Source: Schmidtea polychroa (Eukaryota). Taken from it: a stretch of 64,000 nt of DNA. Every line of letters starts with the position of its first letter. Within the stretch, counting starts at the first letter, position 1. Shown here in pieces: positions 7,140 to 64,000 of this stretch. Location: positions 37,510,001 to 37,574,000 of the forward strand of contig CM097885.1 in NCBI GenBank assembly GCA_044892525.1. The letters run 5' to 3'. The position numbers were made by a program, and so were the translations under genes. The notes under the pieces are model-generated. The model made no database searches, had not been told where the DNA came from, and was given only the letters and a program-made list of their open reading frames with translations.

Positions 7140-9010
7140 ATACATCAACATACAAAAACTTAATTAAAAACATTCAACACACACGTATTCACTGCATTCT
7201 GCACATTGATTTTAGGGTTATAAATTCTTATCAATAATGTTTCACATATCACACTCTCAAAGCAATTATCAAACTTTTTTGATAAGATTTTAAAATCCGA
7301 CATTAATAATTCTCGCATGCAGACTTTATTATAATCCTTAATATTGGACACTCCCCCTTCGGTCGACAATGTTCTTAAACTCGAGTACAGAGATGACGGG
7401 AAGTCTCTCCAATGTATGTGGCATTACTCCAATTACATGTGAATTGATAAACGAGATCCAAAAACGACCCAATCGGAATATGAGATTTATTAACAAACAT
7501 ACTACGTACTTTGCACGATTTCGAAACAATTATATAATTCAATTTACCCAGCTGTTAACATATCTTTCTTTTGAAATATTTATATCAGGGGTGCCCACTA
7601 ATTTTTCTAGGAGAGCTACATTCACATCTACTTTTTTAATACTTACATAATATTTACCTACAATGCAATAAATTCATCACAATAAAACAAATATATGTCA
7701 AAATATGGAAAATTAAACTATATAACTATTTATTATAAAAAAATGTAACTTAGGAAATCAAATTTAATGAAAATTATTTTTATATAGAACTTTTCAATGT
7801 TGATGCTTTACATTGGGTTGAATCCACTAGATTTTTGTAGTTTGGGATATAAGTGCTAAGACAACTTCTTAGGCTGGATTCCAAATGGTCATCTGTTAAT
7901 GTTGCTCGGTACTTTGACTTTATAATTTTCATATGTGAAAATGCAGACTCACATAAATAAGTTGAACCAAAAAATGATACTAAATTTTCGAAGCATTTTT
8001 TCAAGTTTGAATATTTATCCTCTGATAGATATTTCCATACATTTGGTTCGGAAGATCTTGATTAATGAAGATATTATTTTGAAGTGTGATTATTTCCATT
8101 TCAAGTATAGGGATATCCATTTTAAACAAAGTTGAAATTGAATCTGCAACAATTTCTGGTTTTATTTTTGGATTAAACGGAAAGGACATAAATGCAGCCA
8201 CAATTTCAAGTTTCTTGAAGTCTTGAAAACGTCTCTCGAACTCTAAAACCAAAATTTTGATCTGTTCCGCATATCTCGTAATATTAAAGTTGACATTTTC
8301 AGATTCTTTTAATTGTGACAACATATTTGGAAAATAACTTAAATTTTTGTCTTCTATTTTGGTAATAAGTAAATGAAGCTTTTGTATAAATGCATTGATT
8401 GAACTTATCATATCGAATATCAATTTATCCTTACCTTGTAAGTCGAGATTTAATTCATTCAGAATTGCAGTAATATCTACTAAAAATGCCAAATCCAAGA
8501 GAATGAATTGTCTTGAAATGCCTTTCCAAATTCCTTCTTTTTGGTAATGAAATAGTAGCTTTACAAATTAAGCAACAACATTTACCTTTAATCATTACAA
8601 AAAAGTACTCCTTCTCCATTTCTTCGCTATAATGATAAGTCTTGGCTTTTTTATTTAGCATTTTTAAACAAAATTAATTTAACAAAAAAGCTTAAGAAAA
8701 TTTTTCACTTTGTTACACAAAAATTCAAGCATAAAACAGAAATTTTATATAAAATCTAAATTTATATAAAAAATATTTTTTTAAGAAGATCTACTAAAAT
8801 ATCCTTCGCGATCTACCGGTAGATCGCGATCGACCTTATGGGCACCCCTGATTTATATCCTTCAGAATACGGCAATACCATCGTATATTTTAGCTCATCT
8901 TGTTTGTTGGTATCAATACTCATATTCTCTAAATCATTAAAAATCCATAAAATGTAACAATAAGACCTGACATTTAGCACGATACGGAACCGAGTAAAGA
9001 TATTCATTTT
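7140..9010 (-). mobile_element. Penelope-like element remnant (RT linker + GIY-YIG), interrupted by a hAT insertion
   Basis: Minus strand reads MVLPYSEGY (8850-8890), then after the hAT KSCKVRSMFVNKSHIP..LVYQFTCNWSNATYIGETSRHLCTRV*EH and DFKILSKKFDNCFESVICETLLIRIYNPKINVQ, the GIY-YIG pattern of Penelope-like elements. Confidence 0.75.
7586..8850 (-). mobile_element. hAT (GTF2IRD2/SPIN-like) internally deleted transposon
   Basis: TIRs CAGGGGTGCCCA / TGGGCACCCCTG with perfect 8-bp TSD ATTTATAT (7578-7585, 8851-8858). Encodes the N-terminal CLIC..LERHFKTIH directly joined to C-terminal DLAFLVDIT..LNELNLDLQG and STYLCESAFS; the catalytic core is missing. Confidence 0.92.
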
Positions 9011-23535: not shown

Positions 23536-24228
23536 AGTAGGGTATTGTGTGGAGTCGGGAACAAAGACATATGACGTCATCAATGACGTCACAAAGACAT
23601 ATGAGTCATACCCCCAGAGGAGAATTTTTTAAAACAAAGACCATGACTCATCGTGATGACTCATCGTGATGACTCATCGTGGTGACTCATCGTGGTGACT
23701 CATCGTGATTACTCACCGTGATGACTCATCAAGGTCATATTATTATTTTTAAAAAATATTATTATTTTATTTTTAAATATTTTCAAAGTTCCCGCCAACG
23801 AAAATTATTCATCGATAGCTCATTTTAAAGCTCAATCCAAGACCTTTCGAATGAGCTATTGAAGGTATCATCATCATTAATATTGACAAAGTTATTAACA
23901 AATGATGACCACCTTATTTTCATAGTGAAATTATTATTATTATTCAAAATATTATTAGTGGTCCAGCGGAGTCCTGGTTTTCGTTTGCCCAAAAGTTATC
24001 GTTCCAATCATTTAATTTCATTGTTCGATAGCTCATTTTAAAGCTTAGTGCAAGACCTTTCGAATGAGCTATTGAAGGTATCATCATCATTAATATTGAC
24101 AAAGTTATTATCGTTTTCCCGAGACCATTTTCAAGGTCATATAATTATTATTAATCTATATACTCCGAGTCTATCCGACAAAATATTCTGTCCCTCTATG
24201 GGTACAGTTCGTAAGGGTACTGGTCACG
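23536..24228 (+). mobile_element. Terminal module 1 (putative Polinton-like terminus) with CRE/AP-1 array
   Basis: Begins AGTAG. Contains two TGACGTCA sites and 13-bp GTG(A/G)TGACTCATC tandem units. From CAAGGTCATATTATT to GGGTACTGGTCACG it matches 56210-56713 on both sides of the gap there. Confidence 0.55.
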
Positions 24229-24446
24229 NNNNNNNNNNNNNNNNNNNNNNNNNNNNNNNNNNNNNNNNNNNNNNNNNNNNNNNNNNNNNNNNNNNNNNNN
24301 NNNNNNNNNNNNNNNNNNNNNNNNNNNNNNNNNNNNNNNNNNNNNNNNNNNNNNNNNNNNNNNNNNNNNNNNNNNNNNNNNNNNNNACCAATATGAATAT
24401 AGTTTTCAATGTGTATCAAATCAAAACTCCTATTTTATAGTCTATC

Positions 24447-24480
24447 AACCAATCAAAATCATATGGTAGTAATATAAATA
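24447..24480 (+). promoter_or_regulatory. CCAAT box + TATA box of the Bcl-2-like gene
   Basis: AACCAATCAAAATCA at 24447-24461 and TATAAATA at 24473-24480, about 30 bp before the ATG. Confidence 0.5.
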
Positions 24481-24508
24481 AAGCAGTATATTTTAAATTA
24501 ATTTAGAA

Positions 24509-25037
24509 ATGTCGCAACCAAATTTTAGTGAAAATGTTCTAAACGGAATTGTCACCGCGAATATAGTCGACAGCCTCAATTTCCTGATCAATCGAACTGA
24601 ACAAATCATTGAAGGTGAACATATCGATTATCAACAAATGATGGAGATAGAATCCCTGGAAACCAAGAAGTTATACTTCAATAGAATATTTCAGTGTCTT
24701 TTCGATGAAGACATGAAATGGACAAGGATAATTGTAGGATTCACCTACATGAAGATAATCATTGCAAAAGGTCAACATGACTCAGAACATTATTATCAGT
24801 GGTCTTTAGAAGTAAGATTTCTTTTATAATCTATATTTTATTAATATTCATTTCTAGATAATCAAGTCCAAGTTTACCCCATGGATAGAAGCCAATGGCG
24901 GATGGGGTGTATTAAATAAACTGGCCTGCAATTTTAAAGAAACTGATGAAATCAAAAGAAAAATGAAAAACTATATAAAACTTACAACTGGAGTTGTTAT
25001 AATGTATATTTTCTGTAGATATATGAATAAAAATTAA
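24509..25037 (+). CDS. Bcl-2 family protein, 160 aa, two exons (24509-24811, 24858-25037)
   Basis: 46-bp phase-0 GTAAGA...TTCTAG intron. BH1-like LFDEDMKWTRIIVGF in exon 1; BH2 FTPWIEANGGWG and hydrophobic tail LTTGVVIMYIFC in exon 2. Confidence 0.85.
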
Positions 25038-25419
25038 TGTTATTGTTTTTTAATAGTATATTTAAATGAAAATAATTCAATTTTAAAATTTATTAACACA
25101 TTCGTAATCGTCATCTCCACATTTCATTATATTTTCAACGACATGATCAATACAATCATTATTAATATTATCTTTAGGTTCCTCTATAGGTTCATAGATT
25201 TCTGGAAATCAATGATTTCAAATCATCTTATTTGTATAAAAACTTTCCATATTAACTGACGTGTTATTTTTTGTAAATAAAAGAAAAAAAGTCCAATTTT
25301 GTATAATGCCCCAAATATTTATTATATACATGCATTTTTTTCAATTCTCTTCCCTCCTAGAAAAATTGTCTACTTGGTAAAAAATATTTTTGCCGCATCC
25401 CGCCCATGCTTGAACATAG

Positions 25420-26850: not shown

Positions 26851-27757
26851 CACTTGAGTAGAAATAAATACTCCTTAAAAAACGTATTTCAGTAACCAAA
26901 ACGAACATTTTCAATGATACCTAATAAACACATGTTATTATCTATATCTGTGGCTCAATCGATGCGTTTGAAGGAAGATTACAACAACGTTAAATTTTTG
27001 CTCGAGAAGATAAGCTACACCAAGTATCAATGGGATGTGGAGACTTGAAGATGATTGGGTTCCTTCTTGGCCTACAAGGTGGGTACACCAAATATTCGTG
27101 CTTCTTATGCATTTGGACAGCAGAGTGTCAAAGCAACACATCGTTACTCGAGACTGGCCTGCACGCAACGAACTAACAGCTGGTAAATACAATGTAATTC
27201 GTGATAGGTTGATTTTGGCAGAGAGGGTTCTGCTACCACCCTTGCATATCAATTCGCAGTCACCAGCTTTCTAGTACATATCTTCCATGTTTCTTAAGTT
27301 ATCCGATGCAAAACTGAAAGCCGGGGTTTTCACTGGACCGCAGATACGTTGCATGTCAAAAGAGCATGGTGAGAAGTTTCACCAAGATATTCAAGTCATG
27401 GAGAAGTGTTACCAAGGGCGATGGGATGAATCTATGATGGATGATTACGTTTTGGGTTTGGTTCGTAGTGACTTAAGTCAAGCTAAGTCCTTCATTTTTC
27501 ACACAATTAAAGGTAACATTCTTTTTAGCGAGTGAATACTTATTACAACTGATGTTCTATTGTTACCTATAACTTCACTTTTTGAAAGTTACTTAATACT
27601 ATTATACCGTTAATCATAATTATTAATGTAATTTTCTGACAATTGCGTGCGAACGGTTGACAGACACAGAAACAAACTTTGAATTCATATTCAGCAACAT
27701 CGATTCTATACATACAACTGTTGAAAACTGCACATAACTGTGACTTTTTGCTCAGTG
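26851..27757 (+). mobile_element. Chapaev3-like (CMC) transposon, deleted and decayed
   Basis: DWPAR..L..GKYNV...L...RVLLPPLHI, KLSDAKLKAGVFTGPQIR, EHGEKFHQDIQVMEK.YQGRW...MM.DY. The 3' end ...TTGCTCAGTG (CAC-type TIR) is at 27757; the 5' end is degenerate. Confidence 0.7.
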
Positions 27758-28459
27758 GAATAAGTAAAACTATCAATGTTTTTTTGTTGATATTCACGAA
27801 TTTTCGACACAGCCTTTTTCAAGTGATTTTGATATATATATTATTATCACAATAACATATGTTGTCGGGAATTCATATAACAAAAGGAGCTGTTTGATCG
27901 GCATCCTCATTCAAAACTCTACTATAAATTCTTTTTGAAACTTTATAATTATAATTAAAAAAATTAATTAATTATAAAATTGATATATTGTTTTAAACGT
28001 ATTTGTTCAATAGTGCATAAACATTGTTTTTTATTGTAAATTATCGGAAAGCCATTACACAATCAACTGAATTTTGTAGTTTCTTTTTTTTAGAAAATAG
28101 TTTGATATATTTTTCATTTCCGGATAAATTTAACAAATAGAACATATGAAATTCAAAAAAAGACCATGAAATAATTAACTAAAACAAATATTTCAAACGT
28201 TTAATTCAACAATGCATGAATTTTTATTTAAGAAGCAAAGGAAACCATTTATAAATTTACTTTTGATATGAATCGCGTTTTTAAATCTGCTTTCAATGCC
28301 AAATTCTAACTGAAAAAATGTCATACCGAGCTAGGACTGAAATTAAACATAAAATGGATAAAACCATATTTTCAATTATAAATATTAAAAATAAAAAACT
28401 AAAAATTTAATGTAGATGATAATTTAAATATTTAAATTATTTTCATTATGACTGTAGAT

Positions 28460-28840
28460 CAGTGTTTTCTAACACAGTAGTGTGTCGCAAGGTTAAAATA
28501 AAAGAAAACGAACTCCTGCCCTTTAGGAACATTCAAAATATTAAGATACATTTATTTTTTTATCATGCTTCTTATATTGGAAAATTATTTTTTCTGCAAA
28601 TTATTGGCCGCATTTTCATCTTTAAATTATAATTTTTTGAATACCCTTTTATTTTTTTCAATGTTTTTCTCTTCAATGATGGTTGAAAATATGAATTCAA
28701 AATTTATATCTTCACCTAAATGCGATAATATAAAATTTAAACTTTAGAAAGTAAACAACTACACAATTTTTTATTTAGGACTGCCATGAAAAAATCTATT
28801 TTTTGGTGTGTCTTGGACTAGAAAAGATTGGGAATCTCTG
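28460..28840. mobile_element. hAT-type MITE (degenerate)
   Basis: CAGTGTTTTCTAA ... TTGGGAATCTCTG termini; flanks CTGTAGAT / CAATAGAT (6 of 8 match). Confidence 0.45.
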
Positions 28841-29242
28841 CAATAGATCAAACCTTAATTTTCTACGAAACATAAATTTTCAACAGTGGCTTTGAGTACT
28901 ATGGGTTTTAATAATCGGTCAGAAAACTCTTTCGTGGTTTATCCATAACTTTAACTCTAATTTTCATTCGGCAATATATATCGTTTCTGAATAACGGCTG
29001 CTACGTACCGAAAGGGCTAAACTTAAATATAATATTACAAAGTCAGTGTTGAAGATTGTGTTACCTAGAAAATTAATTTTTTATCTATAGTCAATATGAA
29101 AATAAATAAAACATCAATAAAACTGGAAGAAAGATGAAAAAGAGGATTTTACTTATAATATAAGTGAAAATTTAAAAATTTAAAAGTTAACTAATTTTAG
29201 ATTACTTTATTTAATTTTAAAACTAACACATAATTATATAAT

Positions 29243-29790
29243 TACAGGTTCGTTGTGTATAGTTTTGTATAGGACATCCTTTGGAAGTTGAGACACTCTG
29301 TAATGATTTTCCCATTGAAGTGGTACTTTTACCTCCGAATACCACTTCCATCTTACAGCCTATGGATCAAGGCACTATTTCAGTCAGAAATTTGACTGTA
29401 AAAACTATCGAAAAGGCCTTTTCTCTTCACAATCAATGCATGGAGTTATTAGAAGAGAACGATGAAGATTACGAGCGAGTAAATGCTGTTAAACGTGGCT
29501 GTAATGCATTGCTTGATAGTTATCTGCAAATTTTGCGCAATAAATGTAGAGAAGCCAAACAAGGGAATCTAGATTCATTTATACAACGTCGAGAAAAATG
29601 AATAAATTATTAATTTATCCATTGTATTTTTTTTTCAATTCTTAATGTTATTTTCAATGTTTATTTAATTTTTTATTTATAATGTTATTTGCCTTATTAT
29701 TATTCTAATGTCTATTTAATAAATATAAAGTTTTTCAAGTCTTTAAATGTTTTTTTTCAAAAATCCCCGCATTGTATATTACCTGTATAT
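29243..29790 (+). mobile_element. pogo/Tigger remnant (internally deleted)
   Basis: VVLLPPNTTSILQPMDQG is the pogo/Tigger catalytic motif; TA-CAGGT...ACCTG-TA candidate ends. Confidence 0.7.
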
Positions 29791-29998: not shown

Positions 29999-32623
29999 CA
30001 GGGGTTCCCAAACTTTTACCAGTCGAGACCCACTATTTAGACCGCAAAGTTTTCGCGACCCACCTGCAAATAAAACAAGAAAAAAGCTAAAAATGTTGAT
30101 TTACATATTTATTTAACACGCATATTTAAGAATAATTAATAGGATGAATGAGATGAATGAGCCTGCTTTCTATTTTTTGCAATAACATCTTCGACATCTA
30201 CTTTTATATTTGTTGTTATTAAGCGAAGTGAGTTTGATAGCTGTAATTTGTTGCGATATTTATTTTTTATTGCAATCATTGACGAAAATGCAACCTCGCA
30301 TAGATAAGAAGTTGTGAAAGGAAGCAATACTTTTAACGCTGCGGTGTGTAAAGTTGGATATGTGTTTTGCACCGATAACCAAAACTGTAACAATTTCGTA
30401 CCGTCAAAATGTAATTTAACAACACTATCTTCGAATAGCTCAATTAATTCCTCATCCGCTATCGTCGATATACCGGTAACTAAACCACTTTGAAATGGAT
30501 TTTGAACCCATGTATATTTTTCTAGATTTTTCATTTCTCCATAGAAATAAAAATCAAAATTTTCTTTAAGTCTGTCCAAATGCTCAATTATTAAAGAAAT
30601 TAAATCGTTATTGGGCGTTACTTCATTTTCAATGATAAAAGTTTGGAATGTATCAAAGCAGTCATATTTATTTTCTTGAACATTATTTTTCCACAACATA
30701 AGTTTTTTTGTAAAAGCTTTTATTTTACCATGAACCGAAAATATATCAATTCCATTTGTTCCTTGTAATTGTAAATTTAAATCGTTCAATTTCGAAAATA
30801 TATCTGCTAAATAAGTCAGCAAAACTACATATTTCACATCGCGCAAATTTGATGTGTACTCATCTTGTTTATGTTCATGTAAATATATTGCTACTTCTTC
30901 GCGAAGTTCAACAAGTCTTGTCAGGACTTTGCCTTTCGATAGCCAGTGGACTTCTGTATGCAGCAGAAGAGATTTATGTAAACTTCCCATCTCTTCGCAG
31001 AGTTTTTGAAATAATCGTGATTGTAATGGTTTGCTCTTAATAAAATTTACAATTTTTATAGCAGTGGTCAAAACAGTATTTAGACTTTTTGGTATATTTT
31101 TGGATACTAACGCTTCTCTATGAATAGTGCAGTGAGTCCACGTTGCATTTGGACATTTTTGAAGACAACGTGTCACAGCACCACTGTTTTTACCACACAT
31201 TGCTTTTGCACCGTCGCTACATATTCCGACGCAGTTTTTCCAATCCAGTTTTTTCAATGTTATATAAGTGTCGAGCGTATCAAAAATTATTTCACCAGTT
31301 CCTCGAATGATTGGTTCACAAAATAATATGTCTTCAAAGAACTCGTTGCACCATATAAAACGTATGAAAATAATTAGTTGGGACAAACCTTGTACATCAG
31401 TTGATTCATCCAGTTGCAACGCAAAAAGTCCACTAACTTGAATTCTATGGATAAGCTTATTTTCTACCCATTCGGACATTTCATCAATTCTACGAGCAAC
31501 TGTGTTATTAGAAAGTGGAATTGATTCAACTTCTTTTAAGCTCTGCTCTCCAAACATAATTCCAACAGCATCTTTTATAGCTGGAAGTACTAATGACTCT
31601 CCAATAGTGTGCGGTTTACCGGATTGTGCAATTCGCAAACTAATGAGATACGAGGCGAACATAGCCTTTTCATTAATGCTGATGAAGCGAGAAAATAGAT
31701 TTTTTGAATTATTTAATTCCTGTAATTTGGTTTTAAAATAATCAATAGGCTTATTTTTTAAATCGGAATGTTTCGTCTCAAAATGTCGTATTAATTTGTT
31801 AGGTCGCATACTTTCATTAGCCAGAATTTCTTGACAAATAACACACTGTGGGCGTGGATCATCTTCTTTTCTATTCCATGTAAATCCAAATTTTAGATAT
31901 TCAGAATCATATTTTCTTTTGCCACGTTTTGATGATTGCGAACTTGTTGAAGGATTCTCACCAAATTTTCTCTTATTATCTGTTTTTGTTGCTACAGAAC
32001 CTTCTTTTTCTTTTTCATTTTCAATTGTTTGATTTTGCCCAGGAGTCTTTTTCAACCACATATCCATCGCAGCAATGGTTCTTTAAAAATAAGAATATTA
32101 AGAACTTTATTTATTACATGAAATACTATAGCACTAAATTTAAAAAATACTTACATTTGATTTTAAATTATGTTTTTTTATTAACGAAACACTTTTATTA
32201 ACAATATATATAAACTTTTTTATTAACAACACAACACCGTACTTAGTCCAAAACAAAATTTGCACTGGTTGTCTGAATATTTAAAGTTTGTAATCCTAAA
32301 TTTCTAATTAACCGTTATTTGTGTTTGGTTGCCTGGTTAAAATGTAGAAAAGTGGTTGCTATGATGCGATTATTAAAAACAAGTTCTAAATACAAAAATT
32401 TGCTAAAAAGAAGTTTAATTTTTAAACCACCTAAAAATATGCAATAATTTTTTGTCGCAAACCTACTTATATATAAATATTGTGACAAGTTCAGTAAAAG
32501 CAAATTAATATGCTCAGTAATACAAATATTAAATTTTTGGCTAAATATTAAATTTTTGGCGACACACCGAAAATAGCTTCGCGACCCACCAGTGGGTCGC
32601 GACCCACACTTTGGGAACCGCTG
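29999..32623 (-). mobile_element. Full-length hAT Buster/Charlie-type transposon
   Basis: TIRs CAGGGGTTCCCAAA / TTTGGGAACCGCTG with perfect 8-bp TSD GTTTATAA (29991-29998, 32624-32631). Subterminal GCGACCCAC repeats. Confidence 0.95.
30136..32067 (-). CDS. Buster/ZBED5-like hAT transposase, 643 aa, open ORF
   Basis: BED-like CVIC...RHFETKH, LQLDESTD, CSDGA, CTIH (CxxH), EVHWLS and YLCEVAFS. Confidence 0.92.
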   Translation of the reverse strand: MDMWLKKTPGQNQTIENEKEKEGSVATKTDNKRKFGENPSTSSQSSKRGKRKYDSEYLKFGFTWNRKEDDPRPQCVICQEILANESMRPNKLIRHFETKHSDLKNKPIDYFKTKLQELNNSKNLFSRFISINEKAMFASYLISLRIAQSGKPHTIGESLVLPAIKDAVGIMFGEQSLKEVESIPLSNNTVARRIDEMSEWVENKLIHRIQVSGLFALQLDESTDVQGLSQLIIFIRFIWCNEFFEDILFCEPIIRGTGEIIFDTLDTYITLKKLDWKNCVGICSDGAKAMCGKNSGAVTRCLQKCPNATWTHCTIHREALVSKNIPKSLNTVLTTAIKIVNFIKSKPLQSRLFQKLCEEMGSLHKSLLLHTEVHWLSKGKVLTRLVELREEVAIYLHEHKQDEYTSNLRDVKYVVLLTYLADIFSKLNDLNLQLQGTNGIDIFSVHGKIKAFTKKLMLWKNNVQENKYDCFDTFQTFIIENEVTPNNDLISLIIEHLDRLKENFDFYFYGEMKNLEKYTWVQNPFQSGLVTGISTIADEELIELFEDSVVKLHFDGTKLLQFWLSVQNTYPTLHTAALKVLLPFTTSYLCEVAFSSMIAIKNKYRNKLQLSNSLRLITTNIKVDVEDVIAKNRKQAHSSHSSY

Positions 32624-55468: not shown

Positions 55469-56713
55469 AGTAGATGGATTGGGCACCGCTAGCACAGGGC
55501 ACCGCTAGCACAGTACCCCCCTCCCCCTCCCCCGGTCGTAAAATTTTTAAAAAATTCTAAGTCTAAAAGTACATTTTTTTTCAAGGTCAAATTTGAACAA
55601 AGACATATGACTCATCAAGGCCATTGAAACAAAGACCGTGACTCATCCTATGACTCATCAAATTTCTCAAGGTCATTTAAACAAAAACCATGACTCATCC
55701 TGTGACTCACCAAGGGCGTTTTCAAGGTCATATGACTCATAATATGACTCATCGAGGTAAAAAAATTTCCAAGGTCATTTAAACAAAGGTCATGACTCAT
55801 CAAGGTCATTTTCAAGGTCATCTGGGTCATCCTGTGAGTCATCAAGGTCATTTTCAAGGTCATATGACTCATCCGATGAGTCATAAAAATTTTCAAGGTC
55901 CTTTAAACAAAGACCGTGACTCATTCAAGGTCATTCTCAAGGTCGTATGACTCATCCAAGGTCATTTTCAAGGTCATATGACTCATTCAAGGTCATTCTC
56001 AAGGTCATATGACCCATACTATGACCCATCAAAATTTTTCAAGGTCATTCTCAAGGTCATATGACTCATACCATGACTCATCAAAAATTTTCAAGGTCAT
56101 TTTCAAGGTCATCTGAGTCATCATATGACTCATCAAGGTCATTTTCAAGGTCGCATGACTCATCCAAGGTCATTCCCAAGGTCATATGAGTCATTGCGAT
56201 GAGTCATCAAGGTCATATTATTATTTTTTTTATTATTTTTAAAAAATATTATTATTTTATTTTTAATTTATTCGAAGTTCCCGTCAACGAAAATTAATTA
56301 TCGATAGCTCATTTTAAAGCTCAATCCAAGACCTTNNNNNNNNNNNNNNNNNNNNNNNNNNNNNNNNNNNNNNNNNNNNNNNNNNNNNNNNNNNNNNNNN
56401 NNNNNNNNNNNNNNNNNNNNNNNNNNNNNNNNNNNNNNNNNNNNNNNNNNNNNNNNNNNNNNNNNNNNNNNNNNNNNNNNNNNNNNNNNNNNNNNNNNNN
56501 NNNNNNNNNNNNNNNNNNNNNNNNNNNNNNNNNNNNNNNNNNNNNNNNNNNNNNNNNNNNNNNNNNNNNNNNNNNNNNNNNNNNNNNNNNNNNNNNNNNN
56601 NNNNNNNNNNNNNNNNNNNNNNNNNNNNNNNNNNNNNNNNCTATATCCTCCGAGTCTATCCGACAAAATATTTTGTCCCCCTATGGGTAATGCTCACAAG
56701 GGTACTGGTCACG
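55469..56713 (+). mobile_element. Terminal module 2 (putative Polinton TIR) with AP-1/nuclear-receptor motif array
   Basis: Starts AGTAG, then a GGGCACCGCTAGCACA direct repeat and a C-tract. About 20 TGA(C/G)TCA and about 20 CAAGGTCA by hand count. The tail is shared with module 1. Lies next to the RING and pPolB genes. Confidence 0.55.
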
Positions 56714-56821
56714 CTCAACAACTCACAAATCAACAAATCAACAAAACATACATTTATTTAAACAATAAAATAATGTAAAATTAACAAAGGTAAACTAAAT
56801 ATTGATGTACTACTATTTGTC

Positions 56822-57358
56822 TTACATGTATATAATATGATATTCATTAATCAGTGTTGAACAGGCTTGACACTTGCGAACACTCTTCTCGTGACACTTA
56901 GAACAAACAATTACGTGACCACACGGTAAATAAAAAACCGAAACTCGATTTTCTTTACAAATTGAACAAGTTAAATACCTTTTCTTAACATCGTTCAGTT
57001 TTTTCGTTAGCTTATTTTCAATCAAATCGGCTTTCGCTATCCATTCATAAATCAATCTACTATATCCCGGTTTCAACCTTAAATACATACAACTCCAAAA
57101 GTATTCATTCAGTGAATCGTTGTTTACCACTGTTTTTTCTAAGAACATTAAATAACAAGATAACTTGAAAATGGATTTCTCATAATTAAATAAGTAGGTA
57201 GTTAGTAGCCCGCGGGAACAATAGGGGGGGGGTAAAAATGTTGCAAACTTTTGATTGCATAACTTTTTCCTAGACATTTTTTGATTACATAATGCCGTAA
57301 TGCCCAATGTTTTCTGGGATTTTAAATACAAAATTTTTTTTTTCAATAAACAAGCCAA
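56822..57358 (-). CDS. IAP/MDM2-type C-terminal RING protein without BIR (true start uncertain, possibly M at ~57145 or spliced)
   Basis: C-terminal CSICKENRVSVFYLPCGHVIVCSKCHEKSVRKCQACSTLINEYHIIYM* matches the IAP-like RING spacing and ends a few residues after the last Cys. Confidence 0.75.
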   Translation of the reverse strand: MACLLKKKILYLKSQKTLGITALCNQKMSRKKLCNQKFATFLPPPYCSRGLLTTYLFNYEKSIFKLSCYLMFLEKTVVNNDSLNEYFWSCMYLRLKPGYSRLIYEWIAKADLIENKLTKKLNDVKKRYLTCSICKENRVSVFYLPCGHVIVCSKCHEKSVRKCQACSTLINEYHIIYM

Positions 57359-57519
57359 GGATAAATATTATTTGGGTGGGTCTCCTTGGTCCTGAGAATT
57401 TCAATAGAAAAAGGTAGTCTTCAATAAAAAAGCATGGATTTTTCACACAATAGTGAGGGGATCTTCTTGGTCATGAGAATTTCAATAGAAAAGGTGGTTT
57501 ACATTAAAAACGCATAGTA

Positions 57520-58100
57520 AATTTTTAAAATAAAGCAAATTATGGGTCTAAAATTTAAAAATAAAGTAAATGATGGGTCTAAAAAATTTAAGTAAATCAA
57601 GGTTCAGATTTTTTTTGAAATAAAGTAAATTATGGTCTAAATAAGTAAATTATGGGCTAAGATTTTTCAATTAAAGTAAATTATGGTCCAAATTTTTAAA
57701 TTAAAGTAAATTTAGGTTCTAAAATATTAAATTAAAGTAAATTTAGGTTCTAAAATATTAAATTAAAGTAAATAATTGTTCAAAATTTAAAATTAAAGTT
57801 AATTAAGGTCTCAACTAAGTAAATTAAGGTTCAAATTTTTAAATTAAGTAAATAATGGTTCTAAAAAAATTAAAATAAAGTAAATTAAGGTCCTAAAAAA
57901 TTAAATTAAAGTAATGAATGGGCACAAATAACTAAATTAAGGTTCTAAAAAATTAAATTAAAGTTAATTAAGGTCCAAATTTTAAAATTAAGTAATCAAT
58001 GGTAAAAAAATTTAAATTAAAGTTAAATAAGTAAATTAAAGTAATAATTTTTAAATAAGTAAATTAAAGTAATGTAATAAGTAAATTAAAGTAAGATTTT
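57520..58100. repeat. AT-rich ~27-30-bp tandem array (AATTAAAGTAAAT..GGT.C) between the RING and PolB genes
   Basis: Direct reading. Followed by (AAT)n at 58284-58343 and ACACATAA-containing repeats at 58375-58510. Confidence 0.8.
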
Positions 58101-58283
58101 TAAATTTATTAACAAAAAATAGAAGATGTTTGAGAATTGAAATTTTTTAATGAAAATTTTTATGAAATAATTTTTTAATTAATTTTTAATAGAAATTTTA
58201 ATGAAATATTTTTCAATGATAATTTTTAATGGAAATTTTAATAGAATAATTTTTAAGATAATTTTTAATGAAAATTTTTATGA

Positions 58284-58348
<65 letters not shown>

Positions 58349-58540
58349 TAATATTAATAATATATCAACCAAATGTTATACAACACATAAAAAATTAACT
58401 AAACACATAAAAATAACTAGACACATAACAAAACATATAAACATTAACTAAACACATAAAAATGAACTAGACACATAACAAACATAAAAATTTACCAAAC
58501 AAATAACAAATGTATAGATATAAACTTTTATTTAATAAAA

Positions 58541-61500
58541 TTAGTCCTCATCGGACAAAATAACGTCATCGATATCGATGTCATCTTCTCCAAAATCTTC
58601 ATTTAATTCTTCCTCATCTTCTCCAAAATCTTCATTTAATTGTTCCTCATCTTCTCCAACATTTTCATCAAATTCTTCATCAACATTTTCTCCAATATTT
58701 AATTCATTTAATCTTACATGCCCATATGCAAGACTAGTATTTTTCCCCACCCAAACCCTTTTGTCATCTTTGTTTGTTAGTGCTATTTTTGTGTTTTTAA
58801 TTGTAAAAATTTGATGATTTTTGCTTGTTATTTTAGTCTGAGGAACCGAAAAAATCTGGTTAGTGTTATAACAATCCAGGTATGACTGATGTTTTATGTC
58901 ACTACCTTTCAATGTTACACATTTAGCCTTTTTTGTTTCCTCATCACCCAACAAGCTATAACATTTAGGTCTAAGAAAAACCCACTCCTTATATTTAAGA
59001 CCTTTATTCTCGTCTTTGAACTTTCCAATGACTGAATCAAGGTTCTTACTATATAAGGAATGACAACTATTGTAATTGGAAGTATCCAATAAATTATCTC
59101 GAATCATTGCAGGTAAAAGAACCTCAAGTTTACAGTTAATGACTTCGAGGAAAAAAGAATCCGTATCACCCGCAACGATATTAATTTTACAATTAAACTC
59201 ATTGCGAAATGATTCCAGATCCTTATATTGCAACTCATACATTCTAAGTTTAGATAGATCAAGTACAGATTGACCAATGTAACTTGGTCTATCTAAACAT
59301 ATAGAATCTGAATTCAATAGTGCTGCGATTAAATTATCTGCTATTTTAATAGATTTTTTAAAAGTCGGTTTTGACGAATATTTAACTAATTTACCAGCAG
59401 TTGTACAAAGACGAAGATTCATTCTTCTCTTTAAATTTTCAACTGTTTTGCCGTATAAACTGTTATTTAGCAATTTATAATAATTTTTATCTAAGTTATT
59501 TATGCTTTTTGATCTTAATTCGGTATTTGTATCTATATATTTTTTAAAAATTGGTGATTGCTTAAATCTTACACCCCTATTTACACGTGTTACTTTAACA
59601 CTAAGTTCCAAATATAATTTTAATAATCTCCAATGAATAACATAATTAGATTTTGAAAGATGAGTTAATAATAATTTTTCAACCTTAGACCCAGCAGGTT
59701 TCATTTTTTCAGCAGCAACAGGGAAATCATCCAACTTATCATGAAGCTCAGAAGGAATTACAAGATCAACTTCAAGAGTGTATCCATAAGACAAAGATTC
59801 AAGATTTAAATTCCTACATTCATCCATTATTTTATCAAATCCATCAAGAACCCAACTAAATTCGCCACAAGGTAATGATTGACTTAAAGCCCAGCCATAA
59901 AGATTATTAATATCTATATATAGTAACTCGGTGTTCTCGTCGGTTTTTACGTAATGCTTATTCACAAAAGTAAGACCGCCTCTTATTCCACCCTCATAAA
60001 AGCTAAACATTTCGTTTTCAGTTATGAGCTCAATTGGTTCATTTAAAGACATTAATGCAGAAGACCAAGACATACCTGGAATTCCGAAATAATTCAATGG
60101 TTCCAATCTATTGTGAGCAATGGATTTCAACCTAAACTGATGAAAGAAATCAGCCAAAAGAAAACAATCAAGTTTTAGGTAGATCATCATATAATCTAAT
60201 AAAGTTCGGCAATTAGTTTCTACCCAAATCTCCTGAGCTTTTTCATACTCAAGCTCAGTAACACCCTCCCAGATTGGTGGTAATTCATAAGTAGTTTGGA
60301 GAATATCTAAAGAAGTGGCGAAATTATAAGGGAAGATTCCTTTTTCAGAAACTATAGTACCAGAAAAAGCAGAATTAGCAAAAGGCAAAGAATTCAAAGT
60401 TTTGACTGCTTTAGCCAAAGAATCATTGACAAATTGATATGAATCAATGAATCTTAGGCTAATTTTGCCTAAATGAGCAATCAAAGATATAAATTTTTCC
60501 GTAGTTATTGGGATGCACCCTAAAGTCCAATTTTTAAATTTATTTAATCCGTATTTAAGTATATGATGCATATCGTATCCCTTCAAGTTGTGAAATACGA
60601 TAGGCAAAATTTTATTTATTTTTCTATTTACGTTACATGTGCTACAAGCTGCACCCAAGTATTTGCCCGTAAAATGATCGTGATCTCTAACAGGATCCAC
60701 GATAGATTTCAAACAAAGATAACAAACCGATGAATTAACGAATTGTTGTTGCCCAATTTTCGTTAATTTAATCATAGGTTTCCTACCCATTTTATAATAA
60801 AAAGGAAGAACCTTATTTAATGCTATATCCTCTATAGCACTTAAAAAACTCTCGACGCAATCTAAACCTATGAATTGTTGATAAGATTTAGATCCGCCAA
60901 AGTTATTTACTAGTAAAAGACCAGCAGATATTGGCATGTGTCGTTGGAGATGAAGATTATCAGAAGGTAAAATAGCCTCAAAATTGGCATAAACTACAAA
61001 AGGAGGAGTTACTGTTTTCGACCAGTCAGTAAACTGCAATAATTTATTTTGAGGGAAAGTATAAAGAGTTGTTCCTAATTGATTACGTTTACATAATATT
61101 TCATGTTTTTCCAGTGCGTTTCTATTTTTAAAACCATTCAAACACCGATGACACCATATTGATTGTATGCGTGTAGGACAACTAGTGTTTATGTGGCAAT
61201 TCAATAACTTATTTAAATTGCTTATAGCAACGTAATGGAAATTGTTTCCTTTATTTAATAGTAGTAAATTAATTACTGTTCCATTTAAAACTTTGGAACG
61301 ATGTATAATGTCTAAATGTGGATGTTTTAAAACGTAATTATCTGTTAATTGTTTGCTATTGTCATAAGAAAAAACATTAATTATTAAGCCGGGATTTTTG
61401 GCCTCAAATTTTCTAATGTCTTTTAATTTCATGGGTAAATCTAATGGATTATATATTAACTCGGATAGATTATAACTGGATGTCCTATTTCTATATTGTC

Positions 61501-62988
61501 TAACAACCTCATCATATTTTAAAATAGCTAAAATGCTATATAAAAAACATGAATCATCGGTGTTTTTTATATTAATTAAACAATATTTATTTTTTAGACA
61601 AGTAAGTAGTTCAATGAAACTCCTACCACTTAATCTACTTAACCTACTTATCTTTGTTATGGTGAAGTGGATTTCTGTTATTTTTTTTATGATCCAGCTA
61701 CTTCCTAACTCTGTAATATTATTTATTTTCTCGTTTAGTTCCATAATGCCTTCGTCAAAAAATGTTGAAGTTAAAGGTTTTGCGTAATTGGAGATATTAT
61801 TAACCTTTATTTCCCCGTCTTTTTCAAATTCGATAGTTATTCCGAATTGAATTTTGACGGAGCCTAATTCGTTAATAATATCTCTCAATTTTATAATTAA
61901 TTGTTCAGGAAATATTATTTCCTTTATATTTAAGTCGCTAGTATTTAAACTTAATATTTGATGGGTACCCCTTAGATCTTTTTGTATTATGGGAACATTA
62001 CCCCCTATTTGTATTATATTTAATCCGACCTGGGATTCAACAAAAGGCAATCCGACCTGGGATTCAACAAAAGGCAATCCGACCTGGGATTCAACAAAAG
62101 GCAATCCGACCTGGGATTCAACAAAAGGCAATCCGACCTGGGATTCAACAAAAGGCAATCCGACCTGGGATTCAACAAAAGACAATCCGTCCTGGGATTC
62201 AACAACCAATCCATCATTGGATTCAACAAAAGACAATCCAGCCTGGGATTCAAAAGAAGAAGTATCTAATTTAATTTTTTTATTTGTATTATTTTTTTCT
62301 ATAGTTGAGGGTCTTTTAAAAACACTATCTTTTTTAAAATTAAACCTATCTAAATGATTTTTATGTTTATTATAAAAAACGCTATTTGTTACAGGGTCAC
62401 TAGTCTTACATACGGGACATATAAAATATGTTTTATTATAATATTTTTTCGTGTAATAATTCTCCATTATAGAATGGCAATTATTATCATGTTCTTTCGA
62501 TGAACAATAATTTGGATAAAGTATACCTATAAAATAAAAATTTAATAAAAAAAAATATATATATAATTTAAATGAAATATTTTAATAAATGTTTACGCAA
62601 AAATTTACAAATTTTATTTACAAAAAAATAAAAATTTACTAAATTAAAAATATTAAAATTTAATTAAATAAAAAATTATATTAAATTTCCTTTAAATTAT
62701 ATAAAAAAGTAATCAATACTTACATTGTAAATTTTCATTTCGATTTATTGACACATTGACATAATTTTTCTCTTTATTCGTATTACCTAAATTATTAATT
62801 AATTAAATCAATAAATAAAAAATTATGTTTACTTTTTCTTTTCAAATTTCTTTTAATCTTCGATTTTAAATTGTCTTCATTAATATTATCTAAATTAATT
62901 AATAAATTAATTAATAAATAAATTAAAATTTACCAAATTCCTGAATTTTTCCTCGAACATTCATAACGTTTTCTATTAAAGAATTCAT
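58541..62988 (-). CDS. polB: Polinton/Maverick (adintovirus-like) protein-primed DNA polymerase B; long exon 62526-58541 plus predicted 5' exons 62988-62934, 62889-62833, 62786-62724 (~1386 aa)
   Basis: GSSW terminal-protein-like region, OTU-like INIKNTDDSCF...HY, ExoI YANFE, EndoVII-like CYLC...DHDHFTG...C..CN, ExoII FHNLKGYD, ExoIII YLKLD, motif A YIDINNLY, motif B KLLNNSLYGK, motif C GDTDS. The 1308-aa ORF is certain; the 5' exons are a manual prediction. Confidence 0.93.
62022..62255 (-). repeat. 27-bp coding minisatellite (GLPFVESQV)n in the PolB N-terminus
   Basis: AATCCGACCTGGGATTCAACAAAAGGC: about 5 perfect plus about 4 degenerate units. Confidence 0.95.
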
Positions 62989-64000
62989 TTTTAAAGGTTA
63001 ATTATTTGTTAAATGTGAATAATGATTGATTATTGTTTATAGATTATTATTGTTTATAGATTATTATTGTTTATAGGAACAAATTCTAACCAATCAAAAT
63101 CAAGGAAGGGTAGGGAAAAAATATATTACGTTGCGGTATTTTAAAATTAAAATTTATTTTAAAAACACATTTTGACGTTAAAGTCGAGTTATGTAACAAA
63201 GACATAATAAACTTATTATTTACTACAAATATTTCACCTATCAAATACCTAACTAGAGATGATATATATTGATTGTTCATAAAAGCAAACTTAATCATAA
63301 ATTTCTGTATATTATTTTGTAAATTATTTCTGTAAATTAAATTTTGTATATTATTTCTGTAAATTATCAAGTAAATTTAAAGTTCTTGATAAGGTTAACT
63401 GGTTTCTTAGCTTATGTTTTTTTTAAAAAGTTCATCAATGTGTAAATATTCTTAGAAAATTATTGATAAAAAAATATTTAGTCAAATGCATTACAAAGTC
63501 ATCTAAAATTAAACCAATTACTTAATTATTAACATAACAGTCATTAAAAAAAAAATTAATTTTTATTTAAAATTTAACAAATTATCAAGAAATTCAATTA
63601 AAATCATCATTAAAACTTTAAATTTTTTAATAAATCAACATGAAATTCTTAGAAATATGAAAAAAAAAATATTATTACAAAGTTATATCCTATCACATGA
63701 TTATTAACCTGACTGTCATTAAAAATAATTTTTATTTAAAAAAAAAACCAATCAATTAAAATGCATCCAATTATCAAGAAATTAATTAAATTTATCTTAG
63801 AACTAACTTAAAATTTTTAAATATTCATTCAATCCACATGAAATTCACGAAAATGATAAAAATTCACAAAAACCATCAACTCTAAAAAAAATACTAATGA
63901 ATACCTTAAACACCAAAATTTATCTAAATAATCTTTCAAATTAATTCATTAAAATTGAAGACAACACGCTCTATTTTGTCATTACATTCAATTAAAATTA

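What the first reader, a model, noticed from the sequence alone, without database searches (positions are those of the whole stretch)
55469..62988. Polinton/adintovirus-like element whose end carries an enhancer-like module and an IAP-type RING gene, linked to a second locus carrying Bcl-2
Seen: the order is module (55469-56713), RING gene ending about 110 bp from it, repeat spacer, then pPolB pointing toward the module. A related module at 23536-24228, in the same orientation, is followed within about 280 bp (including a gap) by a Bcl-2-family gene. Both modules start AGTAG. Known: Polintons have AG-starting TIRs with pPolB near one end, and large DNA viruses use Bcl-2 and IAP homologues to block apoptosis. 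Inference: these are ends of one family of endogenous Polinton-like viruses that place apoptosis regulators next to their termini, possibly Bcl-2 at one end and RING+PolB at the other. Integrase, ATPase, protease and capsid genes would have to lie beyond 64000.
Basis: partly seen in the sequence, partly recalled or inferred. Interest (0 to 1): 0.85.

Follow-up and report, generated by a model that had tools for sequence, protein, structure and literature searches.

The report
Fragments of adintovirus-like endogenous elements
The region holds the broken-off ends of Polinton/adintovirus-like DNA virus insertions in an AT-rich animal genome: an intact viral DNA polymerase gene, a truncated IAP-like RING gene, a Bcl-2-like gene, and end regions packed with host transcription-factor-like sites. 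This kind of element, including its Bcl-2 and IAP-like genes, is already described.

Summary
The 1308-aa ORF is an intact protein-primed family B polymerase (PF03175, E 2.5e-30). Relatives from metagenomes show that the module is a true element terminus. In a complete 15.6-kb relative, the same 44-nt end (36/44 identical to window 55469-55512) occurs as an inverted repeat at both ends, and PolB points outward about 1 kb from one end. Relatives also carry Bcl-2, RING and TBP genes, and the adintovirus paper already reports Bcl2 and IAP homologues.

The single-element reading is probably wrong. The RING ORF is a 5'-truncated fragment. Its homology to a 96.5%-identical relative stops exactly where a second AGTAG terminus begins (57193), 1.35 kb past the PolB stop. 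The window therefore most likely holds three separate single ends. No integrase, ATPase or capsid genes and no inverted partner end are in the window.

The RING is IAP-like only in its RING domain; there is no BIR. Verdict: partly supported, a new member of a known kind, of modest interest. Side observation: hammerhead-ribozyme-like motifs follow genes in two relatives.

The parts
55469..55512 (+). Alpha-type terminal repeat: AGTAG, then TGGATT, then a 2 x 16-nt direct repeat. This is the outer end of an element piece.
   Evidence: 36/44 identical, without gaps, to the left terminal inverted repeat of the complete relative L001/L106, and 31/44 to its right one. L006 has the same plan. TRF finds 16 nt x 2.1 copies.
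55469..56713 (+). Module 1: terminal non-coding region. It contains the terminal repeat, a C-rich tract (55516-55535), arrays of TCAAGGTCA and ATGASTCAT (55581-56215), an AT-rich block, assembly gap 56336-56640, and a conserved inner block (56641-56713).
   Evidence: The inner ~500 nt are 86-89% identical to module 2.
56714..56821 (-). Linker between module 1 and the RING stop codon. It carries an AATAAA on the minus strand and has no match in the close RING relative L104.
56822..57193 (-). RING gene fragment, a broken gene with one break (a 5' truncation). It keeps the C-terminal IAP-type RING (about 56846-56971) and the stop codon. The ORF runs on upstream to 57358 into unrelated sequence.
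   Evidence: PF13920, E 1.6e-9. Best PDB matches are the cIAP1, cIAP2 and XIAP RINGs, E 1.5e-9 to 5e-8. 96.5% nt identity to L104 over this stretch only; the N-terminal 40 codons of the relative are not in the window. dN/dS 0.77.
57193..58540 (+). Beta-type terminus (AGTAGGT..CCCGCGGG..G9) plus the terminal non-coding region of the PolB-bearing piece. It contains two ~80-nt repeats, a 31-nt array (about 17 units), 13/39-nt arrays, (AAT)n and 49-nt repeats.
   Evidence: The terminus starts exactly where RING homology to L104 stops. It resembles the terminus at 23536 (AGTAGG, and CGGGAACAA at the same offset) and the L004 terminus. It is 1348 nt long, against 1007 and 1120 nt between the PolB stop and the terminus in L001 and L006. 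Arrays.
58541..62467 (-). Protein-primed family B DNA polymerase gene: intact, 1308 aa, no breaks. It has an N-terminal 9-aa repeat region (27-nt x 8.7 copies, 62022-62253), a conserved N-terminal domain, an Endonuclease VII-like zinc motif, a polymerase core (PF03175 match about 59429-60604) and an acidic repeat tail.
   Evidence: It aligns from residue 1 with relatives. It holds every column that is invariant in 27 relatives, including those of the DTDS and NSLYGK stretches read.
62468..63102 (-). PolB upstream region: three TATAAA-containing 17-nt repeats and a CCAAT box (GATTGGTTAGA on the minus strand), with possible short leader exons. No further element gene was recognised up to 64000.
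   Evidence: L008 has the same CCAAT/TATA layout upstream of its PolB. No AGTAG or CTACT and no inverted module in 62468-64000.
23536..24228 (+). Module 2: a beta-type AGTAG terminus, two TGACGTCA and five ATGASTCAT sites, an internal ~210-nt duplication with a 13-bp-stem hairpin, and an inner block shared with module 1. It ends at gap 24229-24386.
24387..25037 (+). Bcl-2-like gene with its promoter: CCAAT at 24447-24461, a TATA-like box, exon 1 at 24509-24811, a 46-nt GT-AG intron, and exon 2 at 24858-25037. Intact, 160 aa, with WTRI (BH1-like), NGGW (BH2) and a hydrophobic tail.
   Evidence: Pfam Bcl-2 E 0.0035 on exon 1, below the cut-off. Best PDB hits are Bcl-2 A1 and Bak, E 0.05-1.3. BLASTP E 7e-7 to the L002 element Bcl-2, which passes Pfam. 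hhalign E 3e-4. All six relatives share the intron position. dN/dS 0.25.
25092..25202 (-). 3' fragment of a small acidic-protein gene convergent with Bcl-2; a broken gene with one break (a truncation). Similarity to the relative L103 ends here, and transposon debris follows.
   Evidence: tblastn of the L103 96-aa protein: 78% identity, E 4e-16. blastn of L103 71-930 against window 24389-25202: 76%.

Best explanation
The window holds three separate single ends of endogenous adintovirus/Polinton-like elements, all with the AGTAG terminus on the left of the + strand and none with its partner end in the window.

1. 23536-25202: an accessory-arm fragment. It comprises a terminus, non-coding module 2, an intact Bcl-2-like gene, and the 3' stub of a convergent acidic-protein gene.
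2. 55469-57193: another arm fragment. It comprises an alpha-type terminal repeat, module 1, and a RING gene that points outward and has lost its 5' part.
3. 57193 to at least 63102: the polymerase arm of a further element. It comprises a beta-type terminus, a 1.35-kb repeat-rich non-coding region, an intact outward-pointing pPolB, and the PolB promoter. This arm abuts, and probably inserted into, the RING gene of piece 2.

How it works (inferred, not shown):
- The conserved 44-nt end with AGTAG is the site used by the element's integrase and by protein-primed replication.
- The arrays just inside it are bZIP-type palindromes (TGASTCA, TGACGTCA, or TTACGTAA in a relative), nuclear-receptor extended half-sites (TCAAGGTCA) and CCAAT boxes.
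- These arrays recruit host transcription factors. They would act as an enhancer for the adjacent arm genes and/or as an auxiliary origin, as NFI and Oct-1 sites do in adenovirus terminal repeats (from my own knowledge).
- The motif type differs between related elements while the 44-nt end is kept. That fits host-factor sites better than sites for a conserved viral protein.
- The Bcl-2-like and RING proteins are accessory genes of the family, presumably modulating host cell death or ubiquitination.
For: Shown:
- PolB identity and intactness.
- The same terminal plan in L001, L006 and L106 at the border with unrelated DNA. In L001/L106 it is an inverted repeat (39/44), bounding a 15,570-bp element with TBP, RING, A32-like ATPase, rve integrase and PolB.
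- The window end at 55469 is 36/44 identical to that repeat.
- AGTAG ends also occur in distant relatives, including an inverted pair in L019.
- PolB stop to terminus is 1007 nt (L001), 1120 nt (L006) and 1348 nt (window, to 57193).
- RING homology to L104 (96.5% nt) ends at the stop codon on one side and exactly at AGTAG 57193 on the other.
- 57193 resembles the termini at 23536 and in L004. Its G9 run is one of only two G/C runs of 7 or more in the 64 kb.
- Bcl-2 cargo in L002, RING cargo in L001, and L103 linking a Bcl-2 copy to an element gene.
- Motif arrays lie far above chance, and different motif arrays occur in the relatives' modules.
- No other element genes are in the window.
- Literature: adintovirus Bcl2 and IAP homologues (PMC8502044); Polinton size, terminal repeats and duplications (PMC10748475).
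Against: - The 57193 terminus lacks the alpha-type 2 x 16-nt repeat. Its similarity to 23536 and to L004 is short: the local alignment score alone is reached by 3% of random 60-mers.
- AGTAG alone occurs 42 times on the + strand.
- The RING ORF stays open for 55 codons beyond the homology limit. Only 1-4% of non-genic windows do so, so a variant N-terminus cannot be excluded.
- L104 is an 862-nt contig at 2x coverage and could itself be rearranged.
- No partner end, target-site duplication or copy number could be examined. The assembly beyond the window and the host were not available.
- The link between module 2 and Bcl-2 crosses an assembly gap.
- No expression or binding data exist, so the enhancer/origin role is inference from motif content.
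- The flanks of the complete relative show no target-site duplication.
Confidence: 0.68

Rival explanations
1. One reading: 55469-62988 is one end of a single element, in the order terminal module, RING gene, repeat spacer, PolB. RING and PolB both point to the terminus, and the remaining genes lie beyond 64000.
For: - The order and orientation are as described.
- 55469 carries the best-conserved family terminus.
- In the complete relative, the first gene next to the left terminus also points outward.
- The RING ORF remains open upstream of the homology limit, with an in-frame ATG.
Against: - Relative to a 96.5%-identical copy, the RING lacks its first 40 codons, and similarity stops exactly at an AGTAG followed by a CCGCGGG/G-run, as at the L004 terminus.
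- In L001 and L006 no gene lies between PolB and the terminus, and the distance is about 1 kb, not 3 kb.
- RING dN/dS is 0.77.
- No relative has RING downstream of PolB.
Confidence: 0.2
2. The modules are copies of an independent non-autonomous repeat (MITE-, Helitron- or satellite-like) scattered at random. The RING and Bcl-2-like genes are then ordinary host genes that happen to lie nearby.
For: - Only single ends are seen, and there is no inverted partner in the window.
- The close Bcl-2 and RING copies L105 and L104 have different flanks without module matches.
- Copy number could not be measured.
Against: - The module's outer 44 nt are the terminal inverted repeat of a complete gene-bearing relative, and they lie directly after PolB in two relatives.
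- The Bcl-2-like protein has no detectable relatives among 1.84 billion representative proteins other than its own small cluster. A 62% copy sits beside an element-specific gene.
- Bcl-2 and RING are cargo genes in relatives.
- The module itself has no terminal inverted repeat; only an 8-nt inverted match is present.
Confidence: 0.05
3. Domestication. The Bcl-2-like locus (23536-25202) is no longer part of a mobile element. It is a host-retained gene that keeps the element's terminal array as its enhancer. This partly overlaps the best explanation.
For: - The ORF is intact, the intron is conserved in all six relatives, the gene has its own CCAAT/TATA promoter, and dN/dS is 0.25 against a 94%-identical copy.
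- Everything else of the element is lost around it.
Against: - The dN/dS estimate rests on 11 differences.
- Several diverged copies (96, 83 and 62%) occur in different contexts, as expected of a multi-copy mobile family.
- No expression or synteny data are available.
Confidence: 0.15

Closest known systems
Adintoviruses (proposed Adintoviridae; Starrett et al. 2021, PMC8502044) and animal Polintons/Mavericks
   Same: - Protein-primed PolB (PF03175).
- Relatives of 15-16 kb carry rve integrase, an A32/FtsK-like ATPase, a C48 protease, and inverted terminal repeats that start with AG.
- Integration into animal-like genomic DNA.
- Accessory genes including Bcl2, IAP-like and TBP homologues, all mentioned in that paper.
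   Different: - The window holds only single ends, with PolB as the sole hallmark gene.
- The best PolB match is 61% identical, and all close relatives are unannotated metagenome contigs.
- The inverted repeat of the complete relative is short (44 nt), against the 100-1500 bp usually cited for Polintons, and no target-site duplication was seen there.
- Two relatives have hammerhead-like motifs after genes. No paper in the library searched links these to Polintons, Mavericks or adintoviruses.
Adenovirus inverted terminal repeat with auxiliary origin (NFI and Oct-1 sites) and the adjacent E1A enhancer/packaging repeats (from my own knowledge; a functional analogy only)
   Same: - A linear protein-primed genome.
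- A short conserved terminal core, followed by host transcription-factor sites and repeated motifs, next to early accessory genes that include an anti-apoptotic Bcl-2 homologue.
   Different: - No sequence similarity.
- The sites here are AP-1/CRE/PAR-type bZIP palindromes, TCAAGGTCA half-sites and CCAAT boxes, in long tandem arrays of up to about 17 copies.
- No binding or replication data exist.
IAP proteins (cIAP1/2, XIAP) and RING-only viral E3 ligases
   Same: The C-terminal RING of the C3HC4_3 type sits at the very end of the protein. The best PDB matches are IAP RINGs, E about 1e-9.
   Different: There is no BIR domain, so it is not an IAP. The window copy is a truncated fragment evolving nearly neutrally (dN/dS 0.77).
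Viral Bcl-2 homologues of large DNA viruses, and the element-borne Bcl-2 of L002
   Same: A short helical protein with BH1-like and BH2 (NGGW) motifs and a hydrophobic tail. BLASTP E 7e-7 to the L002 protein, which passes Pfam Bcl-2.
   Different: It is very divergent: Pfam scores below threshold, and no hit outside its own cluster appears among 1.84 billion representatives. It carries a 46-nt intron at a position shared by all six relatives.

Membership tests
Polinton/Maverick - adintovirus | Protein-primed family B DNA polymerase | tested here: met
   PF03175 at 106 bits, E 2.5e-30, on residues 471-1260. 83 homologues were found, many carrying PF03175 and PF02945. The DTDS and NSLYGK stretches are present, and all 27-sequence invariant columns are kept.
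Polinton/Maverick - adintovirus | Retrovirus-like (rve) integrase | tested here: not met
   There is none in the 64-kb window (Pfam on ORFs; tblastn with relatives' proteins). It is present in relatives L001-L004. It may lie beyond 64000.
Polinton/Maverick - adintovirus | Virion module: capsid proteins, packaging ATPase, adenain-like protease | tested here: not met
   Absent from the window. Relatives have an A32-like ATPase (faint Pfam hits) and Peptidase_C48 in L007. Capsid genes of the relatives were not identified by Pfam.
Polinton/Maverick - adintovirus | Terminal inverted repeats starting with AG | tested here: inconclusive
   The window has three AGTAG ends, all in one orientation and none with an inverted partner. 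The complete relative L001/L106 has a 44-nt inverted repeat, 39/44 identical, and the window end matches it at 36/44. The distant relative L019 has an inverted AGTAG pair.
Polinton/Maverick - adintovirus | Target-site duplication of 5-8 bp and element size of 13-25 kb (PMC10748475) | not testable with these tools
   Only single ends lie in the window. In L001/L106 the size is 15,570 bp, but the 10-nt flanks differ.
Bcl-2 family | Bcl-2 domain (BH1/BH2) at the Pfam threshold | tested here: inconclusive
   Exon 1 alone scores 18.3 bits, E 0.0035, against a cut-off of 31.4. Exon 2 carries NGGW. BLASTP E 7e-7 to the L002 Bcl-2, which scores 40.2 bits. hhalign E 3e-4, probability 39%. The top PDB hits are all Bcl-2 family but weak.
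Bcl-2 family | Helical-bundle fold | tested here: inconclusive
   The AlphaFold2 model of exon 1 with 7 sequences is all helical, but mean pLDDT is 56.5, too low for a fold search. The spliced full-length protein could not be submitted by reference.
IAP (inhibitor of apoptosis) | At least one BIR domain | tested here: not met
   Pfam finds only RING families in the ORF. The close relative P0091 (163 aa) also has PF13920 only.
IAP (inhibitor of apoptosis) | C-terminal RING of the IAP type | tested here: met
   PF13920 at 37.8 bits. cIAP1, cIAP2 and XIAP RINGs are the best PDB matches, E 1.5e-9 to 5e-8.
Transcriptional enhancer / auxiliary replication origin | Clustered binding sites that are bound by host factors and raise transcription or replication | not testable with these tools
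   Only the motif content is shown: 17 TCAAGGTCA and 16 ATGASTCAT in 635 nt, against 0.4 and 0.8 expected in 64 kb. Other bZIP and CCAAT arrays occur in the relatives' end regions.
Hammerhead ribozyme, type III (relatives L001/L106 and L006 only) | Conserved core (CUGANGA, GAAA, a cleavage triplet ending in H) and three helices, with helix III open | tested here: met
   Five copies were found, one of them degenerate. 92% of cells are paired, and 7 of 18 pairs show changes on both sides. Slid controls give 27-51% paired. Rfam Hammerhead_3 reaches only 20 bits against a gathering score of 48.5. Cleavage was not tested. The window has none.

The most novel reading that the evidence does not exclude
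The end regions of this element family are exchangeable cassettes of host transcription-factor sites. Examples are AP-1 with FTZ-F1/ERR-type sites here, PAR-bZIP, CRE or CCAAT sites in relatives, and even different cassettes at the two ends of one element. They sit behind a strongly conserved 44-nt terminal core and may set where and when the element's arm genes and protein-primed replication are active. In the window, one such cassette may have been retained by the host together with an intact, constrained Bcl-2-like gene. In some relatives, hammerhead ribozymes after the genes would add RNA self-cleavage as a way to punctuate transcripts of a DNA virus-like element.
Probability: 0.15. Interest if true: 0.6.

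Novelty: new member of a known kind. Interest (0 to 1): 0.38.

Why it matters
This is a clean example of how endogenous adintovirus/Polinton-like elements decay into nested single ends while one gene (PolB) stays fully intact and another (Bcl-2-like) may remain under constraint. It also defines a conserved 44-nt AGTAG terminal core for a PolB clade so far known almost only from unannotated metagenome contigs. That core could help to annotate such elements and to delimit their insertions. The variable arrays of host-factor-like sites next to the core give a concrete, descriptive handle on how these elements might plug into host regulation. None of this changes the known picture of the family, and Bcl2 and IAP-like cargo is already published.

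Tried and rejected
- **Exact look-ups:** the window's PolB and four other window ORFs are not in the protein collection. The host could therefore not be named, and the scaffold could not be extended past 64000.
- **Sample accessions:** the metagenome sample accessions appear in no paper of the library.
- **Pfam on full-length PolB:** this missed PF03175. The polymerase part alone passes.
- **PDB sequence search with PolB:** no hit.
- **Inverted partner of the module:** an inverted-repeat search and BLAST found none in the window.
- **Rfam:** nothing at gathering thresholds in the window and four loci. Only chance-level hits fall in module 2.
- **Hammerhead model:** it found nothing in the window or in 55 loci beyond its training copies.
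- **Bcl-2 structure prediction:** exon 1 gave a low-confidence model, so I ran no fold search.
- **Distant relatives:** IMG/VR and JGI relatives (25-59% identity) were mostly too short or too distant to inform on the termini.
- **Left undone on purpose:**
  - I did not read or print parts of related contigs that would lie opposite the window's gaps. L103 and L105 were compared by coordinates only.
  - Consensus lines printed by the alignment tools were not used.
- **Transparency note:** (script output) and notebook entries 3 and 4 record where homology of the RING fragment ends. I treat these as the outer bounds of a gene fragment and of the neighbouring element. They coincide with the truncation point, so I flag it here.

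Full report
**Context.** The window is AT-rich (about 27% GC) eukaryotic DNA with seven assembly gaps. It carries:
- exons of a Brahma/SNF2-type gene with HSA, BRK, SNF2 and SnAC domains (minus strand, about 13.8-21.7 kb);
- a proteasome-subunit ORF;
- a Helitron fragment, a hAT transposase ORF and other transposon debris.

The BRK domain and the Bcl-2-like gene suggest an animal host (my inference). The species could not be identified.

**Observation.**
- *Module 1 (55469-56713).* It begins with AGTAG, then TGGATT, a 2 x 16-nt direct repeat and a C-rich tract. It then holds 17 copies of TCAAGGTCA and 16 of ATGASTCAT within 635 nt. Expectation for the whole window is 0.4 and 0.8, and no shuffle comes near.
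- *Module 2 (23536-24228).* It has the same orientation, starts with AGTAG, and shares two collinear inner blocks with module 1 at 86% and 89% identity.
- *Gap 56336-56640.* The two blocks lie on either side of the gap, in the same order and orientation. They are 309 nt apart in module 2, against an estimated 305 nt for the gap. The two sides are therefore very likely one continuous non-coding module. Module 2 has an internal ~210-nt duplication that allows a second register, so the gap's content remains open, and I did not try to read it. No gene crosses the gap.

**The polymerase.** ORF 58541-62467(-) has 1308 codons without a stop.
- Its polymerase part matches PF03175 (E 2.5e-30) and carries an Endonuclease VII-like zinc motif.
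- It has 83 homologues. The closest (up to 61% identity) are all unannotated ENA/JGI metagenome contigs, and insect genome copies are about 33% identical.
- It aligns with relatives from residue 1 and keeps every column that is invariant in 27 relatives.
- The gene is intact, with zero breaks.

**What the relatives show.** Contigs carrying the closest polymerases hold full gene sets.
- They carry PolB, rve integrase, an A32-like ATPase and a C48 protease (L007).
- They also carry a TBP homologue and a variable accessory arm, with a Bcl-2 gene in L002 (Pfam E 5e-10) and an IAP-type RING gene in L001.
- In L001 and L006, the PolB stop is followed by about 1.0-1.1 kb of repeat-rich non-coding DNA. 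This DNA ends in a C-run/G-run, a twofold ~16-nt direct repeat and ..CCANCTACT, after which unrelated DNA begins.
- Read from outside, this is the same plan as window 55469.
- Fetching the rest of the L001 contig showed the inverted copy of this end 15,570 bp away. The two ends share 39/44 positions. The window's end shares 36/44 with the left one, although the polymerases are only about 52% identical.
- AGTAG ends also occur in relatives at about 25% polymerase identity, including an inverted pair in L019.

So the module is the terminal region of this element family, with a conserved core and a variable inner part.
- The inner arrays differ between elements: TGACTCA with CCAAT in L006; TTACGTAA at the right end of L001; TGACGTCA/TGACTCA at its left end; TGASTCA with TCAAGGTCA in the window.

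**RING.**
- The ORF's RING domain is of the IAP type: PF13920, and cIAP1, cIAP2 and XIAP are the best PDB matches. There is no BIR, so it is not an IAP.
- Its only close relatives are two ENA proteins.
- At the DNA level, L104 is 96.5% identical to the window over 56821-57193 only. Similarity ends one base past the stop codon on one side. On the other side it ends at the point where the window reads AGTAGGTAGTTAGTAGCCCGCGGG..G9.
- The first 40 codons of the relative are not found anywhere in the window.
- The sequence starting at 57193 shares AGTAGG, and CGGGAACAA at the same offset, with the start of module 2. It shares AGTAGGT..CCGCGGG plus a G-run with a terminus in L004.
- It lies 1348 nt from the PolB stop, the distance seen in L001 and L006.
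- I therefore read 57193 as the terminus of the PolB-bearing piece. The RING ORF is then a 5'-truncated fragment (one break) belonging to the piece that ends at 55469. Its dN/dS of 0.77 fits relaxed constraint.
- Against this reading: the ORF stays open 55 codons further, which 1-4% of non-genic windows do, and L104 is a short, low-coverage contig. I put the separate-pieces reading at about 0.7-0.75 against the single-element reading.

**Bcl-2.**
- The gene has two exons (24509-24811 and 24858-25037) and a 46-nt GT-AG intron. All six relatives share the intron position.
- The assignment is supported by concordant weak evidence: Pfam E 0.0035 on exon 1; PDB best hits A1 and Bak; BLASTP E 7e-7 to the L002 Bcl-2; hhalign E 3e-4; the WTRI and NGGW motifs; and a hydrophobic tail.
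- A full HMMER scan of 1.84 billion representatives found only its own cluster. It is therefore not a conserved host Bcl-2 gene.
- Copies at 96, 83 and 62% identity exist in ENA assemblies of the same accession series as the closest polymerases.
- The 62% copy (L103) aligns with window 24389-25202. It is followed by a convergent acidic-protein gene and by a gene homologous to an element gene of L003 (E 5e-10).
- The window keeps only the 3' stub of the acidic gene (one break), after which similarity ends.
- In the 94% copy (L105), the 282 nt upstream have no match to module 2. In addition, the window's module-to-gene link crosses gap 24229-24386, so terminal placement of Bcl-2 is not secure.
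- dN/dS is 0.25.

**What is missing.**
- No integrase, ATPase, protease or capsid gene is in the window.
- No inverted copy of any terminus is present, and none lies in 62468-64000.
- The PolB upstream region has a CCAAT/TATA layout like that of L008.
- The two loci are in direct orientation, 31 kb apart, with a hAT transposase ORF and a proteasome-subunit ORF between them. They cannot be the two ends of one element.

**Mechanism.** The mechanism is inferred, not shown.
- The conserved terminal core would serve integration and protein-primed replication.
- The arrays of host-factor-like sites would act as an enhancer and/or auxiliary origin. This is analogous to adenovirus terminal repeats and the E1A enhancer (from my own knowledge).
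- The accessory-arm genes would modulate host cell death or ubiquitination.

**Comparison with the literature.** Adintoviruses are described with Bcl2, IAP and TBP homologues (PMC8502044). Polintons are described as 13-25 kb with terminal inverted repeats and 5-8-bp duplications (PMC10748475). The finding is a new, fragmentary member of this known kind.

**Side observation.** In L001/L106 and L006, hammerhead-type-III-like motifs lie directly after several genes, including PolB. They are supported by compensatory changes but fall below Rfam thresholds. The window has none. No paper in the library links hammerheads with Polintons, Mavericks or adintoviruses.

Noticed in passing
L001 1076-1138, 1693-1758, 2317-2379, 12747-12808; L006 1128-1190; L106 about 8603-8639 (minus): Hammerhead-ribozyme-like motifs (type III plan, CUGAYGAG..CGAAAC core, GUC or CUA site) sit just downstream of several genes of two related elements, including directly after the PolB stop. 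Among five copies, 92% of cells are paired and 7 pairs change on both sides. Rfam scores only 20 bits. The window has none. I found no paper linking such motifs to Polintons or adintoviruses.
   Followed up: partly
window 24447-24461 and 63088-63102 (also 4342-4356 with one mismatch); window 23560, 55596, 63195: The 15-mer AACCAATCAAAATCA (a CCAAT box) is identical in the Bcl-2 promoter and upstream of the PolB promoter. The 12-mer AACAAAGACATA occurs exactly three times, always on the + strand: in both modules and at 63195. This hints at module-like sequence upstream of PolB that I could not place.
   Followed up: partly
L001 1-390, L002 12985-13431, L003 7583-8161, L004 15074-15322: The closest relatives all carry a TATA-binding-protein homologue (PF00352, E 1.7e-19 in L002) in the accessory arm. 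The window has none.
   Followed up: partly
L002, L004, L008 versus L001, L006, L007: There are two gene orders in the clade. In one, PolB converges on the virion-gene block, with its start near a contig end. In the other, PolB is the last gene and points outward to the terminus. L003 has a partial PolB copy and a full one back to back, with terminal-like sequence (C-run/G-run, CCCATTCCAC) between them.
   Followed up: partly
window 62022-62253 and 58581-58682: The PolB ORF contains an in-frame 27-nt tandem repeat (8.7 copies, 9-aa units) near its N-terminus and a 33-nt repeat (3.1 copies) in its acidic C-terminal tail.
   Followed up: no
window 58544-62467 (-): Method note: Pfam on the full 1308-aa protein reported only a weak Endonuclease VII hit. 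The same search on residues 471-1260 gave PF03175 at E 2.5e-30. The conserved N-terminal domain (residues about 200-460, with invariant D, C and H columns) has no Pfam match.
   Followed up: partly
window 23812-23862 (repeated near 24024-24075): A hairpin with a 13-bp stem lies inside the inner part of module 2 (DNA fold z-score -2.9). Its 5' arm also lies in module 1, just before the gap. No Rfam family matches.
   Followed up: partly
L019 192 (+) and 11301 (-); L021 3; L032 305; L048 79: Distant relatives (25-33% PolB identity) also have AGTAG-starting ends, in L019 as an inverted pair 11.1 kb apart. AGTAG therefore looks like a clade-wide terminal signature.
   Followed up: partly
window 4731-5438 (+), 1746-2195 (-), 30136-32067 (-), 27287-29601: Other content of the window: a 235-aa RING-H2 ORF, a Helitron helicase-like fragment, an intact-looking 643-aa hAT transposase ORF, and pogo/DDE-like debris between the Bcl-2 locus and the hAT element.
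   Followed up: no
L001/L106 element ends (L106 7538; L001 13704): The complete relative shows no target-site duplication (flanks ..GAAATTTTAT and CATGTTCATT..). Its two end regions share only the 44-nt core, with CRE/AP-1 arrays on the left and TTACGTAA arrays on the right.
   Followed up: partly
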